Below, one piece after another: positions 8,796 to 61,470 of a stretch of DNA of 64,000 nucleotides; the stretch's first letter is position 1, and each line of letters starts with the position of its first letter. The notes under the pieces were generated by a model that was not told the DNA's origin, did not search any database, and worked only from the letters and a program-made list of their open reading frames with translations. The DNA comes from Octopus sinensis (Eukaryota), in assembly GCF_006345805.1 (NCBI RefSeq), contig NW_021833255.1, positions 1-64,000 of the forward strand. Direction: 5' to 3'. Both the position numbers and the translations under genes were made by a program.

Positions 8796-10267
8796 ATGTC
8801 AAAAATTACCCGGTGCCTTAAAAAATACTCATCATGTCGTTGGAGGTTGTCCTATGCTTGTTTAGCAGCTGTTCTCCTGTTAACAGCATTACGAGTTGAC
8901 CTCGGTATCGCCTTTGCTTGTATGCTGAAAACATCCAACAGTTCACTTCAAGAACTTAATCATACCGGAATAAAGGAAGAATGTTTAGGGTCGGAGAATC
9001 ATTTACCGAATAAAACATTTGAAGGCGAGTTCGAATGGAGTAACTCTTTACAGTCCCACATGTTGGCTGGGTATTATTATGGGTATACCGTGACTAATGT
9101 ATTTGGTGGTATGTTAGCCGACAAGTATGGCGGTAAAAATGTTCTGGGATTTACCCTTATTTCGGTTTCTACTTTGACTCTTCTCTACCCAAGTTTGTCT
9201 CGAATAAGTGGGTACTTTACCCTTGTTTTAAGGATTTTAACGGGTTTGTTATCAGGGTCTATGTATCCATCAGTCCAGTCGTTGTGGGGACGTTGGGCAC
9301 CACCCGAAGAGAGAAGCTCACTAGTTGCGTTTTCGTTTTCTGGCCAAACCTTAGGGACCATTATATGCATGTCGATCTCAGGTTTCCTTTGTGAATATGG
9401 ATTTGACAACGGATGGGGTTCTATATTTTACTTATTCGGTGGAACAACGCTGCTGTTTAGCTGTGTGTGGTTTTATGTTGTTTACAATAATCCAGATGAC
9501 CACCCCAACATCAACGAAGAAGAACGAGTATATTTAAACAGAAACAGAAAAGATAAGAGTGAAGTAAAAAATGTACCTTGGAGGAAAATACTGTCTTCTT
9601 CCGCTATTTGGGCCATTGCTATCGTCCATATGATATCTAGCTGGACAAATACGGTCTTCCAGATGTTGTTACCATTATATATGAAAGAAGTATTAAACAT
9701 TGATCCTTCGGCGAATGGTTTAATGTCTTCAACTCCGTCGTTGGGACAATTCATATTCTTACCATTATCAGGAAAACTTGCAGATGTTCTACTTTCCAAG
9801 AATTATCTGTCAACTCGTTCAGTCCGAGTAATATTCCAGTCTATCTCCCTTGGTGGATCAGCATCTTTGCTTATTGTCATCGGATTTCTGGAATGTGATC
9901 AGACGATTTTAACAGGAATCCTTTTTTTCCTCTCTGGCTGTGCCATGGCATTTTATTCTGGTGCTTCCTAGTAAACCATATCGACGTTGCTCCCAGATAT
10001 GCTGGAGTTTTATACGGATTTACCAATACATTTGCATCAATATGTAGTATTTTATGCCCCTTAGCGGTTAAAGCTCTTACACCAAACGGTACTCAAACCG
10101 AATGGCGAACAGTGTTGATCTTGAGTGGCGCCTTCTCTTTCTGTGGTGCATTGATTTTCGCGATATTTGCGAAAGGAAGCGAACAAGAGTGGGCTGTTAC
10201 TAGAGACGATTCTTCGCGAATATCTACAAAACTTGAAGAACCTATGATGCTGAAAGAACGTTGTTAA
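8796..10267 (+). pseudogene. SLC17A5-like: SLC17 sialin-like MFS anion transporter, copy 1 (single exon, one -1 frameshift near 9967)
   Basis: ATG 8796; motifs LRVDL, GGMLADKYGGK, WGRWAPPEERS, LLPLYMKEVL. The ORF stops at 9971 but continues in a shifted frame from 9968 (LVNHIDVAPRYAG...EWAV) to TAA 10265-10267. The frameshift could be an assembly error. Confidence 0.88.
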
Positions 10268-14922: not shown

Positions 14923-15039
14923 CATATAATATGAACAGGTGTATATAGCAAGAACAATTGTAAAAGACATTATTCTTTTTCCAATAATATCAATAATAGA
15001 TAAATGTCGAAAAGAGAGCTAATGATGATATCATTGATC

Positions 15040-16007: not shown

Positions 16008-17005
16008 ATGATGTCTAAATTTCTCAGTAATATTAAGCGCTATTATTTGTGTCGATGGAGATTATGTTATGCGTGTACAGTTGCTTTTCTTCTGATGCAA
16101 ACATTAAGAGTTGATTTAAGCATGGCCTTTGTTTGCATGCTGAAAACACCTAATCGTATAAATGAGGAATTTAATTTTACCACAGACAACAAACAGTGTT
16201 CCGGTTTAGGCGATCATTCTGTAGACCGAAGTTACGAAGGAGAATTCGAGAATTCACTATTAGTGAAGAAGAATGTTCCTATTTAAAGAAAACTATAACA
16301 AGTGAAAAGTTAGTTAAAACAATACCTTGGAAAAAATGCTTTCCTCACCTGCAGTTTGGGCGATAATCGTCGGTTTCTTGCTTATTGTTGGACAGATTTA
16401 ACATTCCAGGTGTGTTACCACTCTATACGAAGGAAGCCTTAAACATTAAAATAACATCCAATGGTTTAATGTCGTCTGCCCCTGCCATTGGTCAAATCAT
16501 TGCTTTACCGTTGTGTGGAAGATTTGCAGATTTTATACTTTCAAAGAAATATCTCTCAACTCGTATCGTTCGAGTTTTATTCCAAAGCGTTTCTCTGATT
16601 GTTTCAGCATGTCTGTTGATTGCCATCGGATTCCTCAGATGTGACCAAACCATTCTAATAAGTATTCTTTTGATTCTAAGTGGTATAACTCTATCATTTA
16701 CCAGTGGCGGTGTTCTTGTCAACAACAGAGACATTGCTCCAAATTATGCTGGTATTATATTTGGAATTGGTAACACGTTTGCCGTATTGTTTGGAAGTTT
16801 TAGTTCCTTATCTACAAAAGCTTTAACCCCAAACGGTACACAACAAGAATGGCAGATCGTGTTCGCCTTATGTGCTGCTGTATGTGTAGCTGGTGCGATA
16901 TTATATGTGATATTGGCAAGAGGAGAAATCCAAGATTGGGCAATTTCAGAAGAATCCGGATCGTCTGTCAAACCAAGAGAGACAAAAATGAATGAAAAAA
17001 TTTAA
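16008..17005 (+). pseudogene. SLC17A5-like: SLC17 sialin-like copy 2 (about 470 bp internal deletion plus 1-nt deletions)
   Basis: Near-identical to copy 3 but jumps from GAATTCGAG (16250) to CACTATTAGT, missing copy-3 bases ~24214-24683; retains the C-terminal TMs and stop at 17005. Confidence 0.92.
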
Positions 17006-19235: not shown

Positions 19236-19343
<108 letters not shown>

Positions 19344-22053: not shown

Positions 22054-22111
<58 letters not shown>

Positions 22112-22494
22112 TACGTAAAATATAGGCTAGTGTGTTTTCTTTTTAGAAATTTCACTACAGTCGCCTAGCAAGTTTAAAATGTCAATAGACAACATATTCT
22201 CAATATAAAATAGTTTACATTTAAACATAAGAGAAAACCACCGCCAGCAGACAGTTTTTACACGCTACAAGAAATAGTAGATGTATATATGCACATATAT
22301 ATATATATATTTGCATATATTTACCCTCAAGCCAGCAACCTGATGAGGTCGACGACCTGTAAAAATCCGAGGTAGATCGTACAATTGATCGTAGCTAAAA
22401 ATTAACAACTTAACCTATTTTTAATGTGTTGAGTACTTCTTCAATTTTAAATTGATTGCCTTTCGATAGATTTGCATTCAATGCATATGCAGCG

Positions 22495-22592
<98 letters not shown>

Positions 22593-22813
22593 CTCTATCT
22601 CTGTCTCTGTCTGTCTGTCTGTGTCTGTCTGTCTGTCTCTCTCTCTATATATATATGTAGGCGCAGGAGTGGGTGTGTGGTAAGACGCTTGCTTCCCAAC
22701 CACATGGTTCCGGGTTCAGTCTCACTGCGGGCACCTTGGGCAAGTATTTTGTACCGACCAGAATCTTATAAGTGAATTTGGTAGACGCAAACTGAAAGAA
22801 ACATTCACTATAT

Positions 22814-22861
<48 letters not shown>

Positions 22862-23970
22862 TTTCATATAAAATGAACAAGTTATATAGCAAGAACAATT
22901 GTAAAAGACATTATTCTTTTTCCAATAATATCAATAATAGATAAATGTCGAAAAGAGAGCTAATGATGATATCATTGATCTAATATTGATTTCTTACATT
23001 GATACAGGGTCACATATTTCTAGGAATTCGGAATCGATCGAGTCTTGTCTAAAACAAGGAATAGAGATAAAAATACTCTGCGAACTTTCTTTCCCAACGT
23101 TACCAATTCATTCCACCAACATTGTTTCTGATGTAATTATTCTTAAAACTGCATCTTCAGTTTCTGCCACATTTTGAATATAGGGAATCACTCAACGTGG
23201 AATAGAAAATAGCATTCTAAGCAGCACCACAAATATATACTGAGCGAATATGAAATATAATCAAACGTATCAAAGAATACGAACCGTTCTGCAAACACAG
23301 TTCTCTGGGAATTTACTACCATTCTCTATTTCCACCAAACTGAACTTTTAGAAATCAAAGAACCAATGGAATGGAACGCAGAAATTTCAGAAACCAGGAG
23401 AATCCCAATAACGTTCAACGGCGTCTTATGTAAGAATAAGGCTTCATTTTTACAAACGACAGAGAAAGAATTGAAAGTGGTGCTATTAATTCTTGTATGT
23501 ATAAAGAGTTCTTGGATCTGTTTTCTCCGCAATTTGCTGTTACGACCCAACACTTTCACAGTAACCTTCATTCTTGATTGCGTTCTTGCTTTGACGTAAC
23601 GTTTTCTATTTGTAAATAAAGTACGGGCTAAACATGTTACCAAATGATCATTACTGACGTTTATCGACACCTTTATAGTGATTGGTAAATGACGTCCATG
23701 TTTATCGATTATACATTGTAATAATACACTTAGAAATGTGACAGCACGAATGACATCTTCGTCCTAATTTCTGAAGACCCCATCACATTCAATTAAATAT
23801 TTACTTTGTAAACAAAACAAACATCTTTTATAAAATGAACTCACGTTAAACAGTTGAACAAAACAATGAAATAAAAATTCTTTAACTGCAGCAGTTGTCC
23901 TTTAATCTGCGATAAAATATTTAACATTACATCACATATCAATATTATAAGAGTCAGTGGAAATAACATA

Positions 23971-25170
23971 ATGATGTCTAAATTTCTCAGTAATATTAAG
24001 CGCTATTATTTGTGTCGATGGAGATTATGTTATGCGTGTACAGTTGCTTTTCTTCTGATGCAAACATTAAGAGTTGATTTAAGCATGGCCTTTGTTTGCA
24101 TGCTGAAAACACCTAATCGTATAAATGAGGAATTTAATTTTACCACAGACAACAAACAGTGTTCCGGTTTAGGCGATCATTCTGTAGACCGAAGTTACGA
24201 AGGAGAATTCGAGTGGAACGACTCCTTACAAGCCAACATGTTGGCAGGTTACTTCTATGGGTATATGGCAACAAATATTTTGGGTGGACTTTTAGCAGAC
24301 AAATATGGTGGAAAAAAAGTCCTAGGAATTTCGCTTTTATCAAAATCAATTTTAACCATTCTTCATCCAAGTTTATCTGGAGTTAGTGCTTATTTTACAC
24401 TTGCTCTAAGAATATTAACCGGTTTACTATCAGGGCCAGTGCCCCCTGCAATTCAATCATTATTTGAACGTTGGGGCCCTTCACAGGAGATAGGTTTATT
24501 GGTTGGTTCCGCATTTGCAGGTCAAATTCTAGGTAGTATTGTAGGTCTTTCATCTTCTGGTCTTCTTTGTGTTTATTGCTTTGATAATGGATGGGGTTCT
24601 ATATTCTATGTATTCGGTGGAATATCGTTGGTGTTTAGTTGTGTGTGGTTTTATGTGGTTTATGACAGCCCAGACGTCCATCCCACTATTAGTGAAGAAG
24701 AACGTTCCTATTTAAAGAAAACTATAACAAGTGAAAAGTTAGTTAAAACAATACCTTGGAAAGAAATGCTTTCCTCACCTGCAGTTTGGGCGATAATCGT
24801 CGGTTTCTTTGCTTATTGTTGGACAGATTTAACATTCCAGGTGTTGTTACCACTCTATACGAAGGAAGCCTTAAACATTAAAACAACATCCAATGGTTTA
24901 ATGTCGTCTGCCCCTGCCATTGGTCAAATCATTGCTTTACCGTTGTGTGGAAGATTTGCAGATTTTATACTTTCAAAGAAATATCTCTCAAATCGTATCG
25001 TTCGAGTTTTATTCCAAAGCGTTTCTCTGATTGTTTCAGCATGTCTGTTGATTGCCATCGGATTCCTCAGATGTGACCAAACCATTCTAATAAGTATTCT
25101 TTTGATTCTAAGTGGTATAACTCTATCATTTACCAGTGGTGGTGTTCTTGTCAACAACAGAGACATTGCT
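23971..25170 (+). pseudogene. SLC17A5-like: SLC17 sialin-like copy 3 (3'-truncated after NNRDIA; last two TMs missing)
   Basis: Open from 23971; identity with copy 2 ends at 25170; the frame reads into unrelated inserted sequence and stops at 25221. Confidence 0.88.
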
Positions 25171-33189: not shown

Positions 33190-36100
33190 ATGGCTAGCCA
33201 CCAAAAATCCAACAAAAACTGGTCTGATAATGAAATCGACGTTTTATCAGCACATGGCGTGGCCTTACCCAAACTGAGAGAATAGGAGCTTCGTGTCTGA
33301 ACGAAATTGCTAAACGAACAGTTCACCATTTGCAAACTCGATCTGAACAGCAGATACAAAATAAGTTAAAACAAATCGAAGTTGCTTTTAAATTAATAAA
33401 TAAACACTTCGATAAACTGAGATGTGTTTTCTCTTCGAACGCATCTCCGGCACAACAACAACAACAACAACCTCAACAACAAACAGCGGCAACAACAAGA
33501 GTATGAACCACTCCTTGATTCTTCTACAATGGCCGATTTGCTAAACGAAACGATTGACCCCCCCAGTCATCAGGGTCACACAGCAGGAAGCACCACCCCT
33601 TCCTTTCACTGCCCCAGCAGCTCAATCATCATCATTGTCAACATCTTCTCCCCTGCTTACAACTACTAGTACTACACCCACTATCTATCCACAAACATCT
33701 TTGTCTACCGCTATATCATGGAATCCACCTCCTCAATCATCATCACTGTCATCATCTCTTCTGCCTACTACTACTACTACAACTACTACTACTAATGCTA
33801 TCTCAAGGAGTCTACCTCCTACAGGTCACAAAGGTCGCCAAAACCTCAACAAACTATCATCTACAACTCATACACGCACCTACACACCCACTCGAAACCC
33901 CATCATTTGCCGATATTCTCTTCGCCATAAATTATGCACTGATAGCGACTGCAAATTCACCCATTTACCGGGAACAAAACGCTATATCCCCACAAACTAC
34001 AACAGCTACCACCATAATGCATACTCTATTACAACACCACCACAACCACCAATAACTAAAAGAAGGAATCCTCAAATCTGCCGCTATTCCCAGCGAGACA
34101 GATTGTGTTTGCACAGAGATTACCCCTTTACCCATCTCCCGGGGACTCGTCGGACAATTGATTATAAAAGTAAAAATAAAAACAAAAAAACCTACGACTC
34201 ATATAACAATAACCACAACCACAGTCACATACAGTTCCCTACAATAACCATATAATAATAACCACAACCACAGTCACCTACAGTTCCCTAGACAGGAAAC
34301 TTCTTTCTCTTTTTTAGCTATAATTAATCTAGCAAAAGAACTGGAAAAAAAACATCCGAGCTATCACCCATCACCATTCACCACTATCACCCCACTGCAC
34401 ATGCCATTAAAAAAGCAATCAAATAAACAAAACACCAAAACAATTAAAAATATCCACTCTCGCCTCAACATTTTTGCTTAATGCCCAAGGCATCAGCCCT
34501 TCCACCAATACTCAAAAATGGAAGATAAAATTCCTGGAGGACTGGGTCGATACCCATCCAAACCACATCCCTTTCTTCGTCCTCACTGAAACCCATCTTA
34601 GTAACCTCCACTTGGAAGCCGAGGTGAAAGTTAAAAATTTCAAAGCCATTCGTGCTGATCGTGCTGGCAGAAGAAAGGGTGGGACTGCCATTTATGTTCA
34701 TGATTCTTTCTCAACAGAGGTTATGAACATATTTTCCAATGGATACTGCGAAGCAGTCGCTGTATTAAGTCAACCCAACAACTTAACAGTAGTTGGGCTC
34801 TACAGACCACCCCAAACGCCCCTACCATGCTTCAAGGAATGCCTCAATAACATAAAGTGTTTCATTCAGCAGTATCAATCTGACAACATCTTAATGATGG
34901 GGGACTTCAATCTCCCTGGAGTTGACTGGTCTATAAACAGTCTGCCGCTAGGTTCTTCTGCCTCAACCCCTGACAGGGAGGCAGTGGAATCGCTTCATGA
35001 TTTCATGGATGATTTTTTCCTGTCCCAACTGGTGCTCGAACCAACGGGATGTCACAAAAACGTCCTAGACTTAATTTTCAGCAATCACACTGACACTATC
35101 CATAATATTGTAGTGGAGAAAACCCTACTCTCCGACCATGACATGGTTCTCTGTGATCTGAGATTTCACCGGCCAAAATGCAAAACAAATGTCATCCCTC
35201 CTGTCCATCCATTTGACACTATGGATTTCCACAACGCAAACTGGGAAGCGATCAGTAATGATCTTGCACAAGTCGATTGGTCCTTCACGCACACATACAC
35301 ACCCACTAACATAAAAAAAAAACATCAATAAGTCCTGGCAGTCATTTGTAGACACCATTACGAACATATGTGCAAAACACACCCCATTAAGATCTGCAAA
35401 CAAATCTAAGTGCAGAATCCCCAGAAATAGAAAAAACTCTCATCAGGAAAATTAAAAGAATCAACAAAAAAATCAACAAGCTAAAATACTGCCAACAGCA
35501 ACACACCAACCTGACTGCCATCACGTCACTAGAGATTAAAAAAACATAACCTCTAAAACAACATGATGTCTATCATCAATAGTCAGAGAAGAGCTGAAGA
35601 GGCCTGGGCCATTGAGAAGATCAAACTTAATCCCAAAGTGTCCTTCTCATTTGCAAAACAACACAAAGTTACTGGCTCTACTGTTGGCCCTCTGATTGAT
35701 GAAAATCGTACTCTTCAAGACAATGCCAAAACCAGGGAGAGATGTTGCAAAAACAATACTGCTCTGTTTTCAGCAATCCTGATATGGCTGATCTGGGCTG
35801 TATCACTGATGTTACTCCCCAATACACTTTATCGGACATAACCTTTGGCGCTCCTGATGTCTTAGCAGCAATAAAGGAAATGAAGCATAATTCAGCAGTA
35901 GGTCCCGATAGGTTCCCTGCTTGTGTCTTGAAGATGTGTCAACACCAACTTGCACCTCCTCTAGCCAATCTGTGGCGGAACTCACTGGATGCTGGATATA
36001 TACCAGAAAACCTTCTATCCCAGTCTGTTGTCCCAGTTTTCAAAAAAGGAAACAAATCTCTTGCCGTGAATTACCGTCCAATCTCACTCACCTCTCATAT

Positions 36101-37521
36101 CATTAAGGTATTTGAGAGAGTGGTGAGATCGCGTATGACTCACTTCCTTGAGAGTCATAATATGCTGAACTCCAACCAGTATGGATTCCGTAATGGAAGG
36201 GATTGCCTGACACAGCTACTGCATCACTTCGATGACATTTTGAGAGCCTTGGGAGAGGGTTCCAACACTGATGTTATCTACCTTGATTTCAGCAAGGCCT
36301 TTGACAGGGTTGATCATAAGATCCTTTTGAGAAAGCTGTCCAATATTAGTGTCACTGGAAAGCTGCTGCAGTGGATCAAGTGCTTCCTGTCTAACAGAAC
36401 CCAACATGTTGTAGTCGAAGGAGTCAAATCCAGCCCAGCCAAAGTCAGCAGTGGTGTCCCACAAGGCACTGTGTTGGGCCCACTTCTCTTCATCATCTAC
36501 ATTAATGACATCACTGACATCATCAAACACAGTAACATCAGAATTTTTGCTGATGATTCCAAGCTCCAGAAGGTCATCAATGTCGTGGATGACCGGATAA
36601 ACCTTCAGTCAGACCTACTGGCTGTTGTCCAATGGGCGGAAAAGAACAACATGTTGCTAAACGAAGACAAATTCGAATTGATCCACTTTGGAAGGGAGGA
36701 CGCTCTGAAACTCCCATACTCCCTTCCTTCTGGTGAAACTCTCATGGCGTCTAACAACAGCAGAGACTTGGGAGTAACTGTGGACAACAACATAAGCTGG
36801 GCTACACATATAAGCAGCAAAGTTGACATGGCCCGCAGAATGTGTTCCTGGATTCTCAGAACCTTCCAGTCGAGAGATTCCCACACCATTATCCTTCTCT
36901 TCTCCACCTTTTCCCGACCTCACCTTGAATACTGCTGTCCACTGTGGTCTCCCTACACGAAACGGAATATTATGAAAGTTGAAGCTCCCCAAAGGTCAAT
37001 CACGAAAAAGATAGATGGCATGTCAGACCTTGACTACTGGGATCGACTGGAAAAGCTGAAACTGTATTCACTCCAACGACGCCGTGAACGCTACATTATC
37101 TGTATGACGTGGAAAATATTCCATCAGCACTGTCCAAATGATATTAGTATCACCTTCAAAATACATCCAAGACTTGGACCCCGTGCCATCCGTCCACAAC
37201 AAAAATCTCAATCGCATCTCATAACAACATTGTGGCACAATTATTTCACCGCAATTGGACCCGCCTTCTTCAACATTACACTAAGACACGTCAAAACAGA
37301 AACTGACCACACAAAATTCAAGAAGATTTTGGACAAATTCCTTCAAACAGTCCCGGACAAACTACCCACACCCGGATATGTCTCCGCAAACAATAACTCT
37401 CTGCTCGAATGGGCCTTGGTGCCCAAATCCTGAATTGAAAGACTTCACCAGGTGGCGCTATTAAGTTAGACATGGCCTGGGCCAATACTGGGCAAAACCT
37501 TTCTAAGTTATTCTAAGTTAT
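33190..37521 (+). mobile_element. Near full-length CR1-clade LINE (ORF1 with CCCH fingers; APE endonuclease + RT), frameshifted
   Basis: APE ORF 34474-35331 (LTETHL, MGDFN, SDHDMV); RT ORF 35742-37433 (YLDFSKAFD, GVPQGTVLGP, FADD, LYSLQRRRER); short tandem CTAAGTTAT 3' tail. The 5' UTR may extend to ~32240. Confidence 0.92.
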
Positions 37522-39148: not shown

Positions 39149-40623
39149 ATGTCGAGGTTTATCAGATGGGTGAAACATTACACTTCATGTCGATGGAGAT
39201 TATGTTATGCCTGTACTGTTGCTTTTCTTCTGATGCAAACATTAAGAGTTGATCTAAGCATGGCTTTTGTTTGTATGTTGAAACCACTCAATCGTACAAC
39301 TGAGAAGGTTAACATTACTGCAAACAACCGAGAGTGTTCTACTTCGGACAATATTCTATGAATCAAAACTATGAAGGAGAGTTCGAATGGAGCGATGCTC
39401 TACAATCGAATATGTTGGCAGGGTACTTCTATGGGTATATAGCAACTAATATTTTGGGTGGTGTATTGGCAGATAAATATGGTGGGAAAAGGGTTCTTGG
39501 AGGTTCACTTCTCATAGCATCAATTTTGACCATTCTTTACCCAAGTTTATCTCGAATTAGTGGTTACTTTACACTTTTTCTAAGGATATTAACTGGCATG
39601 GCATCGTCAGCGGTGCCCCCATCAATTCAGTCCTTATTTGGACGTTGGGGCCCTCCAAAAGAAATCAGTTCTTTGATTGGGTTTTCATTTGCTGGTCAGT
39701 TTATAGGTAGTATTGTAGGTCTTTCAATATCTGGTTTTCTTTGTGTTTATGGATTTGATAATGGATGGGGTTCCATATTTTATATATTTGGTGGAATATC
39801 GTTGGTATTTAGTTGTGTATGGTTTTACATTGTTTATGATAATCCAGACGTCCATCCCACAATCAGCGAAGAAGAACGTTCTTACTTAAAAAGGACTATA
39901 GTAAGTGAAAATGTAGTCAAGAATCTGCCTTGGCGACGACTGATTTTCTCACCTGCCGTATGGGCTATTAATTTCGGTATGTTTTCTTATGGCTGGACTG
40001 ATATATCTTTCCAAGTATTGCTCCCTCTGTATATGAAAGAAGCCTTAAACGTTAATACAACAGCGAACGGTTTAATGTCGTCTGTTCCTTCCATTGGACA
40101 AATCATTGCTCTACCGTTGTGTGGAAAATGTGCAGATATTTTACGTTCCAAGAAATATCTGTCAACTCGTTCCGTACGAGTTTTATTCCAAACATTTTCC
40201 ATGGTGGCTTCAGCATGTCTGCTGATTGCCATAGGATTCCTTAGATGTGACCAAACCATTCTAATAACACTGCTTTTGTTTCTCAGTGGTATAACAATAT
40301 CATTTACCAGTGGTGGTGCCCTCGTCAATAACAATGACATTGCTCCAAATTATGCTGGTGTTATATTTGGATTTGCCAACACATTTACTTCCATAGCAGG
40401 CTGCATTAGCGCCGTATCTACTAACGCTCTAACACCAAACGGTACACAAAAAGAATGGCAGATCACGTTCGCCGTGTACGCTGCTATTTGTGTATTTGGT
40501 GCAATATTTTTTGCAATATTAGCAAAAGGAGAGATCCAAGATTGGACAGGTCCAGAAGTACCCGGATCATCTGTGCATCCTAGCAACAGGAATACAAAAG
40601 GAAGAGATGAGAAAATTCTTTGA
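39149..40623 (+). pseudogene. SLC17A5-like: SLC17 sialin-like copy 4 (single exon, one -1 frameshift near 39351)
   Basis: ORFs 39149-39361 and 39334-40623 join into a full-length transporter if one T is restored in GAC AAT (T)AT TCT ATG. May be intact in vivo. Confidence 0.87.
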
Positions 40624-44935: not shown

Positions 44936-45103
44936 TAACATGGAATTATCCCAACCAGATTATGAAGCACAGCCAGTCACTGCCAAACTTAACATAATTT
45001 ATTCGCCAAACTTAACATAATTTATTCGCAACAAATTAGTGTGTGGATTTGTTATTTGTTGTTGGTTATTTTTTTTCTGCTGAAGGTGGAATCAATATTT
45101 TCT

Positions 45104-45660
45104 GTGTTTATTTTTGTTTCTCGGAGATTCATCATTTTTTTCCGCGTGTGCCTTTTGCACCGCATTACGAATTTTCTTGTTTATTTTTGTTTCTCAGAAA
45201 TTCATCAAATTTTCCGCGTGTGCCTTTCGTACCGCGTTACGAATTTTTTTGTTTATTTTTTTCTGTTGTGCAATGTCTCTATTTTTGTTTCTCAGAAATT
45301 CATCAAATTTTCCGTGTGTGCTTTTTATACCGCTTTACAAATTTTCTTGTTTATTTTTGTTTCTCAGACATTCCTCAATTTTTCCGCGTGTGCCTTTTGC
45401 ACCGCGTTACGAATTTTTTGTTTATTTTTGTTTCTCAGAAATTCTTCAATTTTTCCGCGTGTGTCTTTTGTACCGCGTTACGAATTTTCTTGTTTATATT
45501 TGTTTCTCAGACATTCCTCAATTTTTCCGCGTGTGCCTTTTGCACCGCGTTACGAATTTTCTTGTCTATTTTTGTTTTCTCAGAAATTCATCAATTTTTC
45601 CGTGTGTGTCTTTTGTACCGCGTTACGAATTTTTTGTTTATTTTTTTCTGTTGTGCAATG
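45104..45660. repeat. Tandem minisatellite, ~71-72 bp unit, about 7-8 copies
   Basis: Unit TGTTTATTTTTGTTTCTCAGAAATTCATCAATTTTTCCGCGTGTGCCTTTTGCACCGCGTTACGAATTTTCT. Confidence 0.93.
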
Positions 45661-47227: not shown

Positions 47228-47464
47228 GCTAAGGTATTCTGGCAGAATCGTTAGCATGCCGGGCGAAATGCTTAGCCGTATTTCGTCTACTGTTACGTTG
47301 TGAGTTCAAATTCCGCCGAGATCGACTTTGCCTTTCATCCTCTCGGGGTCGATTAACTAAGTACCAGTTACGCACTGGAGTCGATGTATTCGACTTAATA
47401 CCTATGTCTGTCCTTGTTTGTCCTCTCTGTGTTTAGCCCCTTGTGGGTAATAAAGAAATAGGTA
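47228..47464 (+). mobile_element. SINE family B (Meta-domain-like core); other copies at ~6279-6915, 6927-7065, 7400-7680, 46170-46290(-), 46765-46975(-), 54500-54735(-), 56498-57000, 61934-62105
   Basis: Recurrent CTGGCAGAATCGTTAGC head, GCCTTTCATCCTTTCGGGGTCGATAAATTAAGTACC core and GCCCCTTGTGGG..AAAGAAATAGGTA tail. Confidence 0.9.
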
Positions 47465-48920
47465 TTAAGTTAACATTCGCTGTTTTGGAATTTTCAAGCG
47501 ATTCAGTTCCCTCTATACGCGCCCAATCTTGGACTTCTCCTCTTGCTAATATCGCAAACAATATTGCACCAGCTACACATACAGCAGCAAACAAGGCTAA
47601 CACGATCTGCCATTCTTCTAGTGTACCATTTGGAGTGAGAGCTTTTGCAGACACCGTACTAATACTGCCGGCTGCTGTTCCAAAAGCGTTGGCAATTCCA
47701 AATACAACGCCTGCATAATTTGGGGCAATGTCAATATTGTTGACGGTAACACCACCACTGGAAAAGGATAGAGTTATACCACTAAGAAACAACAGGATAA
47801 TTATTAAAGTGTTTTTGCCACATCCGAGGAATCCTATCGCGATTAACAGACTTGCTGAACCTAACATAGAAAAAGTGTGGAATAAAACTCGAACAGAACG
47901 AGTTGACAGATATTTCTTTGAAAGTATAATATTTGCGCATTTTCCCCAAAACGGTAGAGCAATTATTTGCCCAACTGCAGTGACAGACGACATTAAACCG
48001 TTGGATGTTGTATTAACGTTTAAAGCTTCTTTCACATAAAGAGGTAACAACACCTGGAAAGCTAGAGTAGTCCAACAATAAGCAAACCAACCAAAAATGA
48101 TGGCCCAAACTGCAGGTGAAGAGAACAGCCGTTTCCAGGGTACATTTTTAACTACTTTTTCACTCACTATAGTTCTGCTTAAGTAAGAATATTCTTCTTC
48201 GCTGATAGTGGGATGGACGTCTGGATTATCGTAAACTACATAAAACCACACACAACTAAAAACCAAACATATTCCACCAAATATGTAAAATATAGAACCC
48301 CATCCATTATCAAACCCATACACACAAAGGTAACCTGATATCGAAAGACATAAAATACTACCTAAATACTGGGCGGCAAATATAATGGCAATCAATAAAC
48401 TAATTTCTTGTGAAGGAGCCCAGCGTCCAAATAAGGACTGAAGTGCAGGATAGATCGGCCCCGATACCACACCTGTTAATATCCGTAGGACAAGAGTAAA
48501 GTAGCCACTAACTCGTGATAAACTTGGGTGGAGAATGGTCAAAATTGATGATGAGAGAAATGAAGCCCCCAGAACTCTTTTCCCACCATATTTATCTGCC
48601 AATAAACCACCGACAATGTTAGTCCCTATATATCCATAAAAGTAACCAGCTAGCATGTTTGATTGTAATTTGTCACTCCATTCAAACTCTCCTTCATAAT
48701 TTCGATTTGATGAATAATTATGCAATGCAGAACAACGATGTTCGTTTGCAGTAAAGCTAACTTCCTCAGTCGTACGATTGAGTGGTTTCAACATACAAAC
48801 AAATGCCATGCTTAGATTAACTCTTAATGTTTGCATCAAAAGACTAGCAGCAGCACAGGCATAACATAGTCTCCAACGACAAGAAGAATAACGCTTTATC
48901 CAGAGCGTAAATTGAGACAT
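47433..48920 (-). CDS. SLC17A5-like: SLC17 sialin-like MFS organic anion transporter, copy 5 (intact, single exon, 495 aa)
   Basis: Uninterrupted ORF from ATG 48920 (MSQF...) with LRVNLS, GGLLADKYGGKR, FGRWAPSQE, NNIDIAPNYAG motifs and about 12 hydrophobic segments. Exact orthology is not established. Confidence 0.93.
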   Translation of the reverse strand: MSQFTLWIKRYSSCRWRLCYACAAASLLMQTLRVNLSMAFVCMLKPLNRTTEEVSFTANEHRCSALHNYSSNRNYEGEFEWSDKLQSNMLAGYFYGYIGTNIVGGLLADKYGGKRVLGASFLSSSILTILHPSLSRVSGYFTLVLRILTGVVSGPIYPALQSLFGRWAPSQEISLLIAIIFAAQYLGSILCLSISGYLCVYGFDNGWGSIFYIFGGICLVFSCVWFYVVYDNPDVHPTISEEEYSYLSRTIVSEKVVKNVPWKRLFSSPAVWAIIFGWFAYCWTTLAFQVLLPLYVKEALNVNTTSNGLMSSVTAVGQIIALPFWGKCANIILSKKYLSTRSVRVLFHTFSMLGSASLLIAIGFLGCGKNTLIIILLFLSGITLSFSSGGVTVNNIDIAPNYAGVVFGIANAFGTAAGSISTVSAKALTPNGTLEEWQIVLALFAAVCVAGAILFAILARGEVQDWARIEGTESLENSKTANVNLIPISLLPTRG

Positions 48921-49219
48921 TTTTGTTAACTTCAACTTCCAATTATTTTAAGAGATGTGTGATGTAATTTTTAAATATTGAATGAAACAGTAAAAGAGAG
49001 ACACCGAAAATGAGCAAACTATTACTTTCCTGTGCGCAGCTTCATTTCATAAAATTAATGATGGTTGTTTGGTCTCTAAAGTGCATATTTAACCAGATGA
49101 AATCTGATGTTCAAACCTTTTGATTAAGATATCTTAATGTCAATATATTTCAGAGTAGCTTGGTGCATTTCATTATCGATAAATATAGACATGTAAACCC
49201 GTAAGCTTAGTGTTAATAT

Positions 49220-49309
<90 letters not shown>

Positions 49310-54909: not shown

Positions 54910-55098
54910 GTAGAAATTTTTTTGGGGTAGACCCTGTATACAGTGGCTGTGTGGTAAGAAGCTTGCTTACCAACCACATCGTTCCGGCTTCAGTCCCACT
55001 GCGTGGCACCTTGGGCAAGTGTCTTCTACTGTAGCCTCGGGCCGACCAAAGCCTTGTGAGTGGATTTGGTGGACGGAAACTGAAAGAAGCCCGTCGTG

Positions 55099-55293
<195 letters not shown>

Positions 55294-55310
55294 GTCTCTC
55301 TGTCTCTCTG

Positions 55311-55345
<35 letters not shown>

Positions 55346-58300
55346 CTATTTATATATATACATATATATATATACACACATATATATATATACATATGTA
55401 TGCATGCATATATATATGAATCTGTTTGTGTGTGTGTCTGTGTTTTGTTTGTTCCTCGCACTCGCTTGACAACCGATGCTGGTGTGTTTACGTCCCCGTA
55501 ACTTAGCGGTTCGCCAAAAGAGACCGACCGAATAAGTCCTTCGGTCGATTTGTTCGACTAAAGGCGGTGCTCCAGCATGGCCGCAGTCAAATGAACGAAA
55601 CCAGTAAAAGAATGCAAGGGTAATATATATCTATTTATGTGTTTGTTTGTGTGTGTGTGCGTTTGCGTAAGGTTTTACAGGGTTAAGTATGCGTTTCATT
55701 TATGTTTCAGTGAATGAATATGTCAGTGTACGTGTGAGACTGTATGTATATGAGTGTATAAAACTGTGTATATACAATACTACGTATACAAAATTTTGTG
55801 CCGGTGGTGAATAACAAAACGTACTTACAGCGTTACAATAGAATACTTGTCCCTGCGGAATGCCTGCGTTCCGTGATTCCATTGGATGAATTATACACAT
55901 CCACATTTGTACAAGTGTATACATTTAGTGATTAAGTTGTTTTTTTCTTAATACGTTATCTCCAGAGGATAATCCCATTTGTGCTGGCTACGAGATTTAA
56001 ATGATCAACGCTACTGGAGGTCATTCAGATCTTTCTCAAAATGGTCGTTCAGTTACTTCTCTCTCAAAATGTCGTAAGCGGTTGTTTTCTCGGTAGATTT
56101 GTTTAAATATAAAGTAAATGAATTATCAATTACTTTGTGTGAAAAAAGTGACATTTTATTTCACATTCTTAAACCTTTCTAAGTATCGTATTCTCGACAT
56201 TCATCTGGCGACTGGCCATCGGAATTGCGACTGTTAAATCTGCGTGCTCCAGATTCAGCTGTCTCTAACATTTCTCATATTACGAAGGGAAGATCTTTTC
56301 GTGTTATTTTATATTATTCACTTTTGAAGTTTCATTTGTTGTATTTTCGTTTGTTGTCTATTTTGTGACATTGTCTTTCATAAATAGAATATAAAGTGCT
56401 TTGTACTTTCGATGAGTCAATTACAATGGTTTTGTTGGTTACTCATAGGCCATCGTATTTATGTATGGTTCGCTTTTATTTTAATATCAGTGTGTACTAA
56501 GGCGGCGAGCTGGCAGACACGTTAGCACGTCAGCCGGAATGCTTAGCAGTATTTCGGCTGCCATTACGTTCTGAGTTCGAATTCCACCGAGGTTGACTTT
56601 GCTTTTCATCCTTTCGGGGTCGATAAATTAAGTACCAGTTACGCACTGGGGTCGATGTAATCGACTTAACCCGTTTGTCTGTCCTTGTTTGTTCCCTCTG
56701 TGTTTAGCTCCTTGTGGGCAGTAAAGAAATAGGTATTTCATCTGGCGTTACGTTCTGAGTTCAAATTCCGCCGACGAGTACCAGTTAGGCACTGGGGTCA
56801 ATGTAATCGACTTAATCCCTTTGTCTTTCCTTGTTTGTCTCCTCTATGTTTAGCCCCTTGTGGGCAATAAAGAAATAAGAAACGTTAGCACGCCAGGCGA
56901 AATGTTTAGCGCTATTTCGTCTGTCTCTACGTCCTGAGTTCAAATTCCATGGAGGTCGACTTTGCCTGTCATTCTTTCGGGGTCGATAAATTAAGTACCA
57001 TTTGCGTATTGTGGTCAATGTTGGAAACTCCACAAGCTGTAAAATTCAGAATAGGAATGACTTTTAGGCGCAGAAGTGGCTGTGGGCTAAGTAACTTGCT
57101 TATCAACCACATGGTTCCAGGTTCATTCCCACTGCGTGGCACCTTAGGCAAGTGTCTTCTACTATAGCCTCGGGCCGACAAAAAAACTTGTGAGTGGATT
57201 TGGTAGACGGAAACTGAAAGAAGCCCGTCGTATGTATGTATATGTGTATGTGTGTGTGTGTAGATGCTCGATTAAAGGCGGTGCTCCAGCATGGCCGCAG
57301 TCAAATGACTGAAACAAGTAAAAGAGTAAATGAGTAAAATAAATAACAACAACAATATCAAGAACAATAACAGTATTATGTAATGTTTCCTTTTATTATT
57401 ACAATTTGGATCTTTTCAAGCATGCAACAAAAATATTTGATATAATGGCGCTGGAAAGAGAAACAAAACAGACTTAAATTGTTGCTGATTCAGTAAAATA
57501 CCTATCATTTTGAAGAGAGAGGATAATGTGTACGATAGAATTTGGCACATTATTTGATCGATACCGAAAGGAAGCAAGGCAATTCTGAATTCAGAGCATA
57601 AATCGTAGTCAAAAATTACGCAGACAGATTTTAGCGAATCTTTAAAGGATTCTACGCCTTCTCCTCACTTTTATATATGAGACCCAATTTCCATTTATAA
57701 TTCTAATAAAACGCAAAAAAGCACAGGGCCATTCTGGAGTAGTTTTACCATGACTAACTGGAGATGGTAAAATTATTAATTAGATTAAACACGCTGTAAA
57801 TGATTAATTACACAATAAGGCAACATAATTAAAACATATACAATTATTTAAACTATTTACCATACAGATAGAGTAACATACGCACACAAACAAACATATA
57901 GGTGGGAACCTACCAGATCGTTTGGACCGGAATATTCCACAAATTTAATCCTCACGACGCCATAAAACTGTTACGTATGCTTACATGTTACCTTATGTTA
58001 CCGTATCTGCTCATCGACGTATATAACTCCACACACGAGCAGGAATTAGCATTCGCATCTTCGCACGCACAAAAGTTACAGCATTAACATCGCCTGACGC
58101 ATTCCAAATATATTTTACACAGAGACGCCATTACGAATAAATACAGAAAAGGTATACAAACATCCACAGCCATACATACACGCACACATATACCTAAGAG
58201 CACGCGACTACGCTAGATTTCAGTGCGTTGAAGGCGCGCTAAAATGCAGAACAATCACCTAGGGGTTCTGAGCTCAATCCGAGGCAAGTTACTAAGGTGA

Positions 58301-60009: not shown

Positions 60010-61470
60010 CTAAGCAATTTTATTTGATTGTGTGTCGCTATGATTAACGGAAGGTCCAGACTCTTCTGACCTTGCCCAATCTTGTATTTCTCCTCTTGCA
60101 AATATTGTATACAAGATTGCACCAGATAAACATATGGCAGCCAACAATGCAAACACAATCTGCCATTCTTCTTTAGTGCCGTTTGGGGTCAAGGCTTTCG
60201 TAGATAAGGGACAAATGCTGCTGGCTATTGTTCCAAAAGTGTTTGCAATTCCATATACAATACCTGCATATTTTGGAGCAATATCTTTGTTGTTCACGTA
60301 AACACCACCACAGACAAAAGACATTGTTACACCACAGAGAAATAACAGAAAACTTATTAGAACGGTTTGATCACATCTGAGGAAAGTTACGGCAATTAAT
60401 AAACATCCAGGTAGAATCAGAGAAAAGTCTTGGAACAAAACACGGACACAACGAGTTGACGCATATTTCTTGGAAAGTACAAAATCTGCCAGATTCCCAC
60501 ATAATGGTAGAGCAATGACTTGTCCAATTGAATTGGCAGACGACATTAAACCGTTGGATGTGATTTCAATTTTTAGTGCTTCGTTCATATACAGAGGAAG
60601 CAATACCTGTAAAGATGTTTGCATCCACTTGTTAGCGAACTTAGCGAAGTTAATTGCCCAAACTGCAGGTGAAGAAAATAATTTTTTCCATGGTACATTC
60701 TTAATTGCCTTTTTGTTTGTTATAGATGTATTAAGATAAGAACGTTCTTCGTCGGTGATTGTCGGGTGGTGTCCGGATTATCATAAACAAAATAACACCA
60801 TACACAGCAAACGCCAGCGATAAACTACCAAATACATAAAATATGGAACCCCATCATTATCAAAGCCATAAACACAAAGGTAACCTGATACTGAATGGCC
60901 TACGAAGGTACCTAGAAATTGACCAGCAAATGAAAACCCAATCAGTGAACCAATTTCCTGTGGCGGTCCCCAACGTCTAAATATTGAATGAATTGCTGGG
61001 TATATAGGTCCAGATACCATACCTGTTAAAATTCTAAGAACAAGCGTAATGTAACCACTAATTCGAGATAAACTTGGGTGAAGAACAGACAGAATAGAGG
61101 CTAAGATTAGTGAACCCGCCACAACTCTTTTCCCCCCGTATTTATCAGCCAAGAAACCACCCACAATATTAGACATAATAAATCCATAAAAGTACCCGGC
61201 CAACATGTTCGATTGTAATGTGGCACTCCATTCGAATTCTCCTTCAAAATTTTGGTTTATTGAATAATTATCTGAACCGGAACAGTGTTGGTTGTTTACA
61301 GAAATGTTAACTTCCTCAGTTGTACTATTGGGCGTTTTCAACATACAAACAAAAGCCATACTTAGATCGACTTTGAATGTTTGTATGAGTATAGAAACAA
61401 TAAAACAAGCGTAACACACTCTCCACCGACAGGAACAATAACGCTTCGTATACTCGATAAACTTAGACAT
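60010..61470 (-). pseudogene. SLC17A5-like: SLC17 sialin-like copy 6 (about three 1-nt deletions between ~60770 and 60860)
   Basis: ATG 61470; ORFs 60781-61497 and 60010-60624 are the N- and C-terminal halves; single-base losses in GFDNG(W), the following TM and DNPD(x)HPT. Confidence 0.87.

What the first reader, a model, noticed from the sequence alone, without database searches (positions are those of the whole stretch)
47433..48920. Conserved TM4 acidic residues are lost in all readable copies; TM7 pocket positions are hypervariable
Seen: TM4 reads LRILTG-xx-S-(G/S) in copies 1, 3, 4, 5 and 6. Established, recalled alignment: human sialin LRALEGLGEG has R168, E171, E175 and H183, and E175 equals VGLUT2 E191, implicated in proton coupling. 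Here these map to R, T, S and Q (H only in copy 6). The TM1 arginine is kept (K in copy 6), the VGLUT TM7 arginine is absent, and the ERS motif survives only in copy 1. TM7 varies as WTNTVFQ, WTDLTFQ, WTDISFQ, WTTLAFQ, WMQTSLQ. Inference: a subfamily with altered or no H+ coupling and diversifying substrates.
Basis: partly seen in the sequence, partly recalled or inferred. Interest (0 to 1): 0.7.

Follow-up and report, generated by a model that had tools for sequence, protein, structure and literature searches.

The report
Octopus sialin-like transporter gene array
The region is one intact gene in an octopus-specific cluster of intronless sialin-like (SLC17) transporter genes; it does lack the two glutamates that human sialin uses for proton coupling, but so do most sialin-like proteins of molluscs and their relatives, so this feature is ordinary for the lineage.

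Summary
Copy 5 (47433-48920, minus strand) is an intact 495-aa SLC17 protein, closest to human sialin (E=1e-86; AlphaFold model TM-score 0.94 to sialin). Sialin R57/R168/E171/E175/H183/E194-R195-S196 map to R33/R146/T149/S153/Q161/E172-I173-S174.

The loss is neither recent nor special to this array. T..S occurs in all 32 cephalopod homologs examined, including the multi-exon coleoid parent gene. Among about 120 mostly lophotrochozoan sialin-like proteins, only 31% keep Glu at position 175 and 6% at 171, while S/T at 175 is the commonest state.

The TM7 pocket positions do evolve fast: omega about 0.8 against 0.32 for transmembrane codons (P=0.0006). They do not exceed neutrality, so positive selection is not shown.

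The genes are constrained (omega 0.22-0.32), intronless, and tandemly arrayed, which points to retrocopy origin. This octopus sialin expansion is already published.

One new detail: cephalopods alone carry Asp at sialin N59 and His at T153, beside the lost E171. This could be a relocated proton site, and copy 5 lacks the Asp.

Five of the six copies in the window are disrupted.

The parts
47433..48920 (-). Copy 5: intact intronless CDS (495 aa plus stop) of an SLC17A5-like ('slc-17.2-like') MFS transporter
   Evidence: ORF. Pfam MFS_1, E=5.5e-44. Sialin 8dwi, E=1.2e-86. AF2 pLDDT 90.4 and pTM 0.89. Foldseek to sialin 8u3f/9ayb, TM-score 0.94-0.95. omega 0.215 against the O. bimaculoides ortholog.
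48459..48488 (-). TM4 motif L145-R-I-L-T149-G-V-V-S153-G154. R146 = sialin R168, T149 = E171, S153 = E175.
   Evidence: T is invariant and S nearly invariant in 27 octopod paralogs. The four TM4 codons have omega 0.17-0.24.
48438..48440 (-). Q161 = sialin H183 (cytosolic constriction residue)
48399..48407 (-). E172-I173-S174 = sialin E194-R195-S196. The gate Arg is replaced by Ile.
48816..48824 (-). TM1 R33-V-N35. R33 = sialin R57 (substrate carboxylate binding). N35 = sialin N59, which is Asp in most cephalopod paralogs but Asn in copy 5.
48528..48530 (-). H131 = sialin T153 (TM3, lumen tunnel, contacts E171 in sialin). A cephalopod-specific His.
48054..48092 (-). TM7 G277-WFAYCWTTLAF-Q289. 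W278 = H298, Y281 = Y301, C282 = N302, T285 = F305, L286 = Y306, Q289 = L309. This is the fast-evolving C-domain half of the pocket.
8796..10231 (+). Copy 1: a homolog (59% id to copy 5) with a frame break at about 9965-9971. It keeps ERS and H298.
16011..16993 (+). Copy 2: a pseudogene that lacks aa 90-237 (so no TM4) and has a stop in TM7. It is part of a segmental duplicate of the copy 3 region.
23974..25170 (+). Copy 3: homology ends at aa 399, at the duplication breakpoint (25170). The O. bimaculoides ortholog is intact.
39149..40623 (+). Copy 4: a 1-bp deletion near 39330-39345 relative to the intact O. vulgaris ortholog P0013.
60010..61470 (-). Copy 6: three 1-bp indels and two stops between about 60770 and 60860. 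The O. vulgaris ortholog P0033 is intact there. K replaces the TM1 Arg, and H is present at position 183.

Best explanation
Identity. 47433-48920(-) is an intact, selectively constrained member of an octopod-specific family of SLC17A5-like MFS anion transporters. The family is intronless and tandemly arrayed. It most likely arose by retroposition of a multi-exon coleoid SLC17A5-like gene, followed by tandem duplication.

TM4 state. The parent gene already had Thr/Ser in place of sialin E171/E175. Non-acidic residues at these positions are the usual state in lophotrochozoan SLC17A5-like proteins. The 'loss' is therefore old and is maintained by selection, not a recent decay.

What the protein keeps and what has changed. 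It keeps the SLC17 fold and the two substrate-binding arginines (R33, R146). The N-domain half of the pocket is conserved within the family: R33, Y97 and N411 are retained from sialin, and Y54 is fixed as Gln. The following have been remodelled:
- the C-domain half of the pocket (TM7 positions 298/302/305/306, and TM10 position 411);
- the luminal lock (L309Q, Y335A);
- the cytosolic gate (H183Q, R195I);
- the N-terminal sorting tail.

Inferred mechanism, not shown. The protein carries organic anions bound at R33/R146. It does not use the sialin-type Glu-Glu proton relay. Instead it would be driven by membrane potential or work as a facilitative carrier, as described for SLC17A1-4 (a whale NPT1 reads Q/Q at these two sites). 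Paralogs would differ in substrate range through the C-domain pocket.
For: Fold and family:
- Sequence matches, the AF2 model and the Foldseek result.
- The arginines are kept and the glutamates replaced.

Age of the TM4 state:
- T/S is present in all cephalopod homologs, including the multi-exon Octopus gene P0042 and a Sepia homolog.
- A neighbour-joining tree gives 100% bootstrap for the octopod clade, and 100% for the octopod clade plus the coleoid parent.

Gene structure:
- P0042 has 11 coding exons spread over about 34 kb.
- Every array gene examined in O. bimaculoides (CM046624.1, 2.44-2.64 Mb) and O. sinensis (CM016882.1, 27.72-27.84 Mb) is a single ORF.

Commonness of non-acidic TM4:
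- In 121 sequences, position 175 is S/T in 54, Q in 26 and E in 38. Position 171 is E in only 7.
- A whale NPT1 reads Q/Q.

Constraint:
- Pairwise omega is 0.22-0.32.
- Copy 5 against its ortholog gives dN 0.028, dS 0.131, omega 0.215.
- The TM4 codons have omega 0.17-0.24.

Pocket asymmetry.

Role of the glutamates, and the pocket and gate residues in sialin: PMC9858498 and PMC11116495.

The N-terminal tail is shortened to 12-15 aa and has no dileucine motif.

The octopus sialin expansion is reported by Albertin 2015, as cited in PMC6110919 and PMC6062618.
Against: - No transport data exist for any protostome SLC17A5-like protein, so the coupling mode is pure inference.
- In HEK cells, sialin E171Q/E175Q lost more than 60% of its transport efficiency but retained residual activity (PMC11116495). 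The glutamates are therefore not an absolute requirement, even in sialin.
- Cephalopod-specific D59 and H153 in the proton tunnel may restore H+ sensing in most paralogs.
- The window's copy 5 carries species-specific changes at otherwise conserved TM8 gate residues: D350N, where Asp is found in 26 of 26 paralogs, and R353L. This hints at impaired or altered gating.
- Five of the six copies in this window are disrupted as assembled.
- Retrocopy hallmarks (poly-A remnant, target-site duplication) were not looked for.
- The tree is neighbour-joining only.
- Expression of this gene was not checked.
Confidence: 0.6

Rival explanations
1. Proton coupling or sensing is kept but relocated. In the cephalopod lineage, the titratable function of E171/E175 moved to a TM1 Asp (sialin N59) and a TM3 His (sialin T153). 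Both line the same lumen tunnel next to R168. Under this reading most paralogs (copies 1, 3, 4, 6) are still pH-dependent, and copy 5 (N35/H131) is a partly decoupled derivative.
For: - D59 plus H/Y153 occurs in 27 of 32 cephalopod sequences. Outside cephalopods, about 160 homologs include only 3 with D59 and none with H153.
- Hu 2023 describes the lumen tunnel as passing T153, N59 and R168 and ending at T150/E171, and describes E171 as contacting T153 and R168.
- L60 and T153 are listed among the residues that enclose the R168-E171 salt bridge (PMC13207226).
- DgoT uses a TM1 Asp (D46, equivalent to sialin L56), which lies one helical turn from position 59.
Against: - No model coordinates were available, so distances in the octopus protein were not measured.
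- The co-occurrence could be a single inherited event with no functional link.
- Copy 5 and its ortholog have Asn at position 59.
- There are no functional data.
Confidence: 0.2
2. The TM7 variation reflects positive, diversifying selection for new substrates.
For: - Pocket sites 306, 411, 305 and 302 (plus L415, a cytosolic-constriction residue) rank 7, 13, 18, 27 and 23 of 448 by nonsynonymous rate.
- The TM7 pocket mean omega is 0.80 against 0.32 for transmembrane codons, P=0.0006.
- The same positions are nearly invariant in other molluscs.
- The pocket is fully conserved between copy 5 and its O. bimaculoides ortholog while differing between paralogs.
Against: - Pooled omega is 0.58-0.79, which is below 1. 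The binomial test shows no excess of N over S (P=0.98).
- The highest pocket-site omega is 1.12, from only 12 N and 2 S changes.
- Parsimony counting with saturated dS tends to inflate omega.
- Gene conversion was not modelled.
- Relaxed constraint on half of the pocket gives the same pattern.
Confidence: 0.3
3. The array is decaying. The copies are processed pseudogenes or are becoming non-functional, and both the TM4 and the TM7 changes are neutral drift.
For: - Five of the six copies in the window carry frameshifts, deletions or truncation.
- Copy 5 has lost the invariant D350.
- The genes are intronless.
Against: - Copy 5 is intact and has omega 0.215 against an intact ortholog.
- Paralog pairs give omega 0.22-0.32 over dS 0.18-0.8.
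- T149 and S153 are invariant across paralogs.
- Orthologs of copies 3, 4 and 6 are intact in O. bimaculoides and O. vulgaris.
- The breaks in copies 4 and 6 are 1-bp indels, which could be long-read assembly errors.
Confidence: 0.1

Closest known systems
Human sialin (SLC17A5), lysosomal H+/sialic acid symporter (PDB 8dwi, 8u3d-h, 9ayb)
   Same: - Best sequence match (E=1e-86, about 35% id) and best structural match (TM-score 0.94-0.95).
- 12-TM MFS fold.
- R57, R168, Y119, Y301, N430, D416 and E194 are conserved.
   Different: - Proton-relay and gate residues: E171T, E175S, H183Q, R195I.
- Pocket: Y54Q, H298W, N302C, F305T, Y306L, S411T.
- Luminal lock: L309Q, Y335A.
- The N-terminal dileucine lysosomal motif is absent.
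- The gene is intronless, whereas the octopus parent gene P0042 has 11 coding exons.
Coleoid multi-exon SLC17A5-like gene (Octopus sinensis 'sialin' P0042; a Sepia pharaonis SLC17A5 in the same 90% cluster as P0045)
   Same: - Sister group of the array, with 100% bootstrap.
- Already has T171/S175, D59 and H153.
   Different: - The parent keeps H183, ERS/ERT, H298, N302, Y306, L309 and Y335.
- It has a 47-69 aa acidic N-terminus and 11 coding exons.
- It is 43-44% identical to copy 5.
Mammalian type I phosphate / organic anion transporters (SLC17A1-4, NPT1-4)
   Same: - SLC17 members that lack both TM4 glutamates: a whale NPT1 reads R..Q...Q.
- They are described as organic anion extruders of kidney and liver, and SLC17A1 as a Cl-dependent urate exporter.
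- They are the best functional analogy for an SLC17 protein without the Glu relay.
   Different: - They are phylogenetically distant. NPT1 branches outside the whole sialin-like group in the neighbour-joining tree.
- They have Q/Q rather than T/S, and different pocket residues.
Lophotrochozoan and nematode 'slc-17.2-like / sialin-like' proteins (e.g. Mytilus, Pinctada, Haliotis, C. elegans-group slc-17.2)
   Same: - Non-acidic residues at both TM4 positions (L/I/V/A + S/T/Q).
- Both arginines are conserved.
- None has been functionally characterised.
   Different: - They keep the conserved TM7 motif AHxCNNWTNYTLLT, N59 and a non-titratable residue at position 153.
- They were not seen as an intronless tandem array.
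E. coli DgoT (D-galactonate/H+ symporter, ACS family)
   Same: - Same fold (Foldseek E=1e-11).
- A TM1 Arg next to a TM1 Asp in DgoT (D46/R47) resembles the R57/D59 arrangement in most cephalopod paralogs.
   Different: - DgoT keeps the TM4 Glu (E133).
- Sequence identity is 18%.
- Copy 5 has no TM1 Asp.

Membership tests
SLC17 / anion:cation symporter (ACS) family of the Major Facilitator Superfamily | 12-TM MFS fold with two six-helix domains | tested here: met
   Pfam MFS_1, E=5.5e-44. The AF2 model has pLDDT 90.4 and 12 long helices. Foldseek gives TM-score 0.94-0.95 to sialin, 0.88-0.91 to VGLUT2 and 0.75-0.86 to DgoT.
SLC17 / anion:cation symporter (ACS) family of the Major Facilitator Superfamily | Conserved TM1 and TM4 arginines that bind the anionic substrate (sialin R57/R168; VGLUT2 R88/R184; DgoT R47/R126) | tested here: met
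   R33 and R146 in copy 5. R168 is invariant and R57 nearly invariant across all homologs.
SLC17 / anion:cation symporter (ACS) family of the Major Facilitator Superfamily | TM4 glutamate used for H+ coupling or sensing (sialin E175 = VGLUT2 E191 = DgoT E133) | tested here: not met
   S153 in copy 5. This residue is also absent from 69% of the lophotrochozoan-rich set and from NPT1, so it does not define the family as a whole.
Sialin proper (SLC17A5 orthologs, H+/sialic acid symporters) | E171 + E175 proton relay | tested here: not met
   T149 and S153. Roles of the glutamates are from PMC9858498.
Sialin proper (SLC17A5 orthologs, H+/sialic acid symporters) | Sialic-acid pocket Y54, R57, Y119, H298, Y301, N302, F305, Y306, S411, N430 | tested here: not met
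   Only R57, Y119, Y301 and N430 are kept (4 of 10). The other six are Q, W, C, T, L and T.
Sialin proper (SLC17A5 orthologs, H+/sialic acid symporters) | N-terminal dileucine lysosomal sorting motif | tested here: not met
   The tail before TM1 is 14 aa and has no [DE]xxxL[LI] motif. The gecko and carp sialins carry one. The role of the motif is from established knowledge (Morin et al. 2004).
Sialin proper (SLC17A5 orthologs, H+/sialic acid symporters) | pH-gradient-driven sialic acid transport | not testable with these tools
   Needs a transport assay.
Octopod 'sialin' gene-family expansion (Albertin et al. 2015) | Falls in the octopod-only clade of sialin-like genes | tested here: met
   100% bootstrap for a clade whose named members all come from Octopus spp. 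or Argonauta (two unnamed Logan assemblies are also in it). The closest named relatives are O. bimaculoides, O. sinensis and O. vulgaris 'slc-17.2-like/sialin' proteins. A >=90% identical ortholog is XP_014787309.1. The expansion is cited.
Octopod 'sialin' gene-family expansion (Albertin et al. 2015) | Tandem genomic arrangement | tested here: met
   Six copies lie within 53 kb of the window. Several genes sit within each 21-kb locus on O. bimaculoides CM046624.1 and O. sinensis CM016882.1.
Retrogene-derived gene family | Intronless copies descended from a multi-exon parent | tested here: met
   The parent P0042 has 11 coding exons. Array genes are single ORFs of 485-497 codons.
Retrogene-derived gene family | Poly-A remnant and target-site duplications flanking the founder copy | not tested
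   These are expected to be erased by later tandem duplication, and were not searched for.

The most novel reading that the evidence does not exclude
Cephalopods rewired the SLC17 proton sensor. After the TM4 Glu pair was lost in a lophotrochozoan ancestor, the coleoid lineage installed a new titratable pair next to R168 in the same lumen tunnel: Asp at sialin N59 on TM1 and His at sialin T153 on TM3. The octopod retrocopy array then diversified the C-domain half of the pocket, often adding an Asp at F305. The result would be a battery of transporters with different substrates and different pH or voltage dependence. Copy 5, which has lost both Asp residues, would be a naturally decoupled variant.
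Probability: 0.2. Interest if true: 0.6.

Novelty: new member of a known kind. Interest (0 to 1): 0.3.

Why it matters
- Structural papers on sialin call E171 and E175 'absolutely' or 'strictly' conserved in SLC17 (PMC9858498, PMC13207226). The comparison here shows that most protostome sialin-like proteins lack one or both. Conclusions about proton coupling therefore cannot be carried over from human sialin to these annotations, and 'sialin' is probably a misleading name for them.
- The octopod array offers natural variants. The anion-binding N-domain is held constant, the C-domain pocket and the gates vary, and candidate titratable residues (D59, H153, D305) are present or absent in different paralogs. 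This is useful material for dissecting coupling and specificity in SLC17 transporters.
- It gives a concrete hypothesis for one of the less studied octopus gene-family expansions.
- For the scan itself, the finding is a correct reading of an already annotated and already reported gene family.

Tried and rejected
1. Recent, array-specific loss of the glutamates. Rejected: the coleoid parent and other molluscs already lack them.
2. An acidic residue at the equivalent TM4 site after proper alignment. Rejected: the HMMER, MAFFT and structure-based matches all agree, and TM4 aligns without gaps.
3. The absent VGLUT TM7 Arg as a meaningful feature. Rejected: it aligns with sialin Y301 and is VGLUT-specific.
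4. Positive selection at the pocket. A home-made Nei-Gojobori and parsimony (SLAC-like) count found an elevated rate but not omega above 1. No PAML or HyPhy was available.
5. Pseudogene status of copy 5. Rejected by the intact ORF and omega 0.215.
6. Finding the original Albertin 2015 text. It is not held in the library, so only secondary citations were used.
7. Looking up the window's own contig via P0001. There is no record. The source is inferred to be a 77.7-kb unplaced Octopus sinensis scaffold, from P0032 and P0001 sharing that contig length.
8. tRNA scan for the SINE-like element. No tRNA was found.
9. Whether octopus has any E/E-type sialin. Not resolved: the only octopus protein among the 120 best hits to an E/E query is I/T (P0160).
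Full report
**What is at the coordinates.** The window is AT-rich, repeat-rich animal DNA. 47433-48920 on the minus strand is an uninterrupted ORF of 495 codons starting at the ATG at 48920. It matches Pfam MFS_1 (E=5.5e-44). Among solved structures it is closest to human sialin/SLC17A5 (8dwi, E=1.2e-86), followed by VGLUT2 and VGLUT3. An AlphaFold2 model built on a 70-sequence alignment is confident (pLDDT 90.4, pTM 0.89, 12 long helices). Its best structural matches are the lumen-open sialin structures 8u3f and 9ayb (TM-score 0.94-0.95), then VGLUT2, then DgoT. The nearest database proteins are Octopus bimaculoides, O. sinensis, O. vulgaris and Argonauta hians 'uncharacterized transporter slc-17.2-like / sialin-like' proteins. 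A >=90% identical O. bimaculoides ortholog is XP_014787309.1. The window is most likely a 77.7-kb unplaced O. sinensis scaffold. This is inferred from the contig length shared with the O. sinensis model P0032, which is the annotated form of copy 3.

**Checking the observation.** The HMMER alignment to full-length human sialin has no gaps through TM1, TM4 and TM7. It gives sialin R57 -> R33, R168 -> R146, E171 -> T149, E175 -> S153, H183 -> Q161 and E194-R195-S196 -> E172-I173-S174. tblastn with copy 5 finds six copies.
- The TM4 strings are LRILTGLLSG (c1, c3), LRILTGMASS (c4), LRILTGVVSG (c5) and LRILTGMVSG (c6).
- Position 183 is Q, except H in c6.
- The TM1 Arg is K in c6.
- ERS survives only in c1.
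- Copy 2 lacks residues 90-237, so it has no TM4.
- The equivalence E175 = VGLUT2 E191 = DgoT E133 is stated in PMC9858498. In my alignments, VGLUT-type sequences have Q/E in these two columns.
- The VGLUT TM7 arginine aligns with sialin Y301. It is missing from sialin too, so its absence says nothing.

**How special the TM4 state is.** It is not special. T..S is present in every cephalopod homolog recovered: 27 full-length octopod paralogs, the more distant Octopus sinensis 'sialin' P0042 (43-44% identity), and P0045, whose 90% cluster contains Sepia pharaonis SLC17A5. Other states seen:
- Other molluscs have L/I at 171 and T/Q/A/S at 175.
- Caenorhabditis slc-17.2-type proteins have I/Q.
- Rotifers have I/H.
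- A whale NPT1 has Q/Q.
- E/E appears only in vertebrate, hemichordate, cnidarian and some arthropod sialin-type sequences.

I then searched with an E/E-type query (Saccoglossus sialin-like), which should favour E/E relatives. Of 121 aligned sequences (117 of the 120 best hits, plus human sialin, the query and two cephalopod references; mostly lophotrochozoan), only 7 are E/E. Position 175 is S or T in 54, Q in 26 and E in 38. The one other Octopus protein in that list (P0160, 'sialin') is I/T. The statement in the structural literature that these glutamates are absolutely conserved in SLC17 therefore does not hold outside the few assayed proteins. Coupling has not been measured in any of these proteins. 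Within the octopod family, T149 is invariant and S153 nearly so. The TM4 codons have omega 0.17-0.24, so this state is maintained by selection, not drift.

**Origin of the array.** In a neighbour-joining tree of 70 homologs, the octopod paralogs form a clade with 100% bootstrap. Together with the coleoid genes P0042, P0045 and P0047 they form a second 100% clade, which lies next to other molluscan slc-17.2-like proteins. P0042 is encoded by 11 coding exons spread over about 34 kb. In contrast, every array member examined is a single ORF of 485-497 codons, and several sit within each 21-kb locus. These loci are on O. bimaculoides chromosome CM046624.1 at 2.44-2.64 Mb and on O. sinensis CM016882.1 at 27.72-27.84 Mb. 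The array proteins also lack the parent's 47-69-residue N-terminal tail. The simplest reading is one retroposition of the coleoid gene followed by tandem duplication. That is an inference: poly-A and target-site remnants were not sought. An expansion of 'sialins' in octopus was reported with the O. bimaculoides genome, as cited in PMC6110919 and PMC6062618. The original paper is not in the library.

**State of the six copies.** Only copy 5 is intact in the window.
- Copy 1 has a frame break at about 9965-9971.
- Copy 2 has a 470-bp internal deletion and a stop.
- Copies 2 and 3 belong to a segmental duplication (14055-16738 and 22000-25170, 94-98.6% identical). Its breakpoint truncates copy 3 at residue 399.
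- Copy 4 has a 1-bp deletion relative to the intact O. vulgaris ortholog P0013.
- Copy 6 has three 1-bp indels within about 100 bp, where the O. vulgaris ortholog P0033 is intact.

The single-base indels could be long-read assembly errors. I could not test that.

**Selection.** Nei-Gojobori estimates on 18 CDS give omega 0.22-0.32 over dS 0.18-0.8. The 18 are 13 intact genes from other loci, copy 5, and the in-frame pieces of copies 1, 3, 4 and 6. Copy 5 against its O. bimaculoides ortholog gives dN 0.028, dS 0.131 and omega 0.215. TM4 and the TM7 pocket residues are identical between the two. The gene is therefore under purifying selection.

A parsimony-based count of synonymous and nonsynonymous changes on a neighbour-joining tree gives a global omega of 0.34. 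The five TM7 positions that line the sialin pocket are H298, Y301, N302, F305 and Y306 (PMC9858498). Pooled, they have omega 0.58-0.79 and show no excess of nonsynonymous change over neutrality (P=0.98). Sites 306, 411, 305, 415 and 302 rank 7th, 13th, 18th, 23rd and 27th of 448. Against transmembrane codons only, the TM7 pocket mean is 0.80 versus 0.32 (permutation P=0.0006). Sites 302, 305, 306 and 411 are in the top 6%. The N-domain pocket residues (54, 57, 119) and N430 are below the median. In other molluscs the same TM7 positions are almost invariant. So the C-domain half of the pocket has been released from its ancestral constraint and differs between paralogs, but this crude test does not demonstrate positive selection. 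Saturation, gene conversion and the small sample are caveats.

**Other remodelled elements.** Relative to sialin and to the coleoid parent, the array has several fixed or frequent changes:
- Y54 -> Q.
- L309 -> Q, and its partner Y335 -> S/A. These form the luminal lock in PMC11116495.
- H183 -> mostly Q, and R195 -> mostly I. These form the cytosolic constriction and gate.

The window's copy 5 additionally has D350 -> N, where Asp is found in 26 of 26 other paralogs and in all outgroups, and R353 -> L. In sialin these two TM8 residues seal the cytosolic side. Its O. bimaculoides ortholog keeps D and R.

I listed charged residues in the predicted helices and then tabulated about 190 homologs. 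The cephalopod clade almost uniformly has Asp at sialin N59 (TM1, 'LRVDLS') and His or Tyr at sialin T153 (TM3): 27 of 32 sequences. Outside cephalopods, D59 occurs in 3 of about 160 sequences and H153 in none. PMC9858498 describes the lumen-accessible tunnel of sialin as passing T153, N59 and R168 and ending at T150/E171, with E171 contacting T153 and R168. PMC13207226 lists L60 and T153 among the residues enclosing the R168-E171 salt bridge. A clade-specific titratable pair next to the vacated E171 site is therefore a plausible relocated proton sensor. Many paralogs also have Asp at pocket position 305, including copies 3 and 4. Copy 5 and its ortholog have Asn at 59 and Thr at 305, so they carry only the His. 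I had no access to model coordinates, so proximity in the octopus protein rests on the sialin literature.

**Most likely mechanism.**
- Shown: this is an SLC17-fold transporter with both anion-binding arginines. It lacks the sialin Glu relay and the sialin-type N-terminal dileucine motif, is under purifying selection, and has a variable C-domain pocket.
- Inferred: it carries organic anions without sialin-type H+ symport, driven by membrane potential or working as a facilitative carrier. The analogy is SLC17A1-4, which also lack the two glutamates and are described as organic-anion extruders, SLC17A1 being a Cl-dependent urate exporter. Paralogs would differ in substrate range.
- Rivals: relocated proton sensing through D59/H153 in most paralogs; genuine diversifying selection; decay. 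The first two are compatible with the main reading and remain open. Decay is largely excluded for copy 5.
- Caveat: sialin E171Q/E175Q keeps residual activity in HEK cells. Absence of the glutamates does not by itself prove absence of transport or of pH dependence.

**Verdict.** The TM4 state is the ordinary lophotrochozoan condition, inherited from a multi-exon parent gene. The gene family and its expansion are already annotated and published. Diversifying selection is not demonstrated. The modest new points are the quantified pocket asymmetry, the retrocopy origin of the array, and the cephalopod-specific D59/H153 pair.

Noticed in passing
window 48816-48824 and 48528-48530 (copy 5); the same columns in copies 1, 3, 4, 6 and in P0042/P0045: Cephalopod-specific Asp at sialin N59 and His/Tyr at sialin T153, in the lumen tunnel next to R168/E171. 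Present in 27 of 32 cephalopod sequences and essentially absent from about 160 other SLC17 homologs. Copy 5 has N/H.
   Followed up: partly
window 14055-16738 and 22000-25170: A segmental duplication (94-98.6% identity) carries copies 2 and 3. Its breakpoint at 25170 truncates copy 3 at residue 399, and copy 2 has a 470-bp internal deletion (equivalent to 24214-24683).
   Followed up: yes
window 39325-39350 (copy 4), 60770-60860 (copy 6), 9960-9975 (copy 1): The frame breaks are single-base indels. The O. vulgaris orthologs of copies 4 and 6 (P0013, P0033) read straight through the same places. These are either very recent pseudogenisation or long-read assembly errors.
   Followed up: partly
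window 33554-37433 (+): A non-LTR retrotransposon lies between copies 3 and 4. It has an apurinic-type endonuclease ORF (Exo_endo_phos_2, E=1.7e-12) and a reverse-transcriptase ORF (RVT_1, E=5.8e-31). They are preceded by a Pro/Thr/Ser-rich ORF with two Cys/His-rich stretches that look like CCCH zinc fingers by eye (no Pfam hit).
   Followed up: partly
window 47230-47430 and seven other sites (6770, 7004, 46822, 46897, 54642, 56571, 56755): A SINE-like repeat with a tRNA-like box (GAGTTCAAATTCCGCCGAG). There are 8 copies against 0 expected, and one abuts the 3' end of copy 5. ARAGORN calls no tRNA.
   Followed up: partly
window 45097-45649; 49216-49309; about 4423-5328; 18991-19509; 55019-55501: A 72-bp minisatellite (about 5-7 units) gives overlapping ORFs in three frames. 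There is also an (AT)47 microsatellite, and other simple repeats produce spurious long ORFs (runs of 'IYIY' and 'LSIY').
   Followed up: partly
window 47922-47933 (copy 5 codons 330-333): Copy 5 in this genome has N330 and L333, where all or most paralogs and its own O. bimaculoides ortholog have Asp and Arg. These correspond to sialin D350 and R353, the TM8 residues of the cytosolic seal.
   Followed up: partly
window 47433-47459 (3' end of copy 5): The ORF runs 8 codons past the point where the O. bimaculoides ortholog stops (...NVNLIP*). Two protein models exist for this gene, of 487 and 495 aa.
   Followed up: no
L002-L010 (O. bimaculoides CM046624.1 2.44-2.64 Mb; O. sinensis CM016882.1 27.72-27.84 Mb): The main arrays of the family lie on one chromosome in each species and mix intact genes with truncated models (279-403 aa). 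The window's 77.7-kb scaffold probably belongs to the O. sinensis array.
   Followed up: partly
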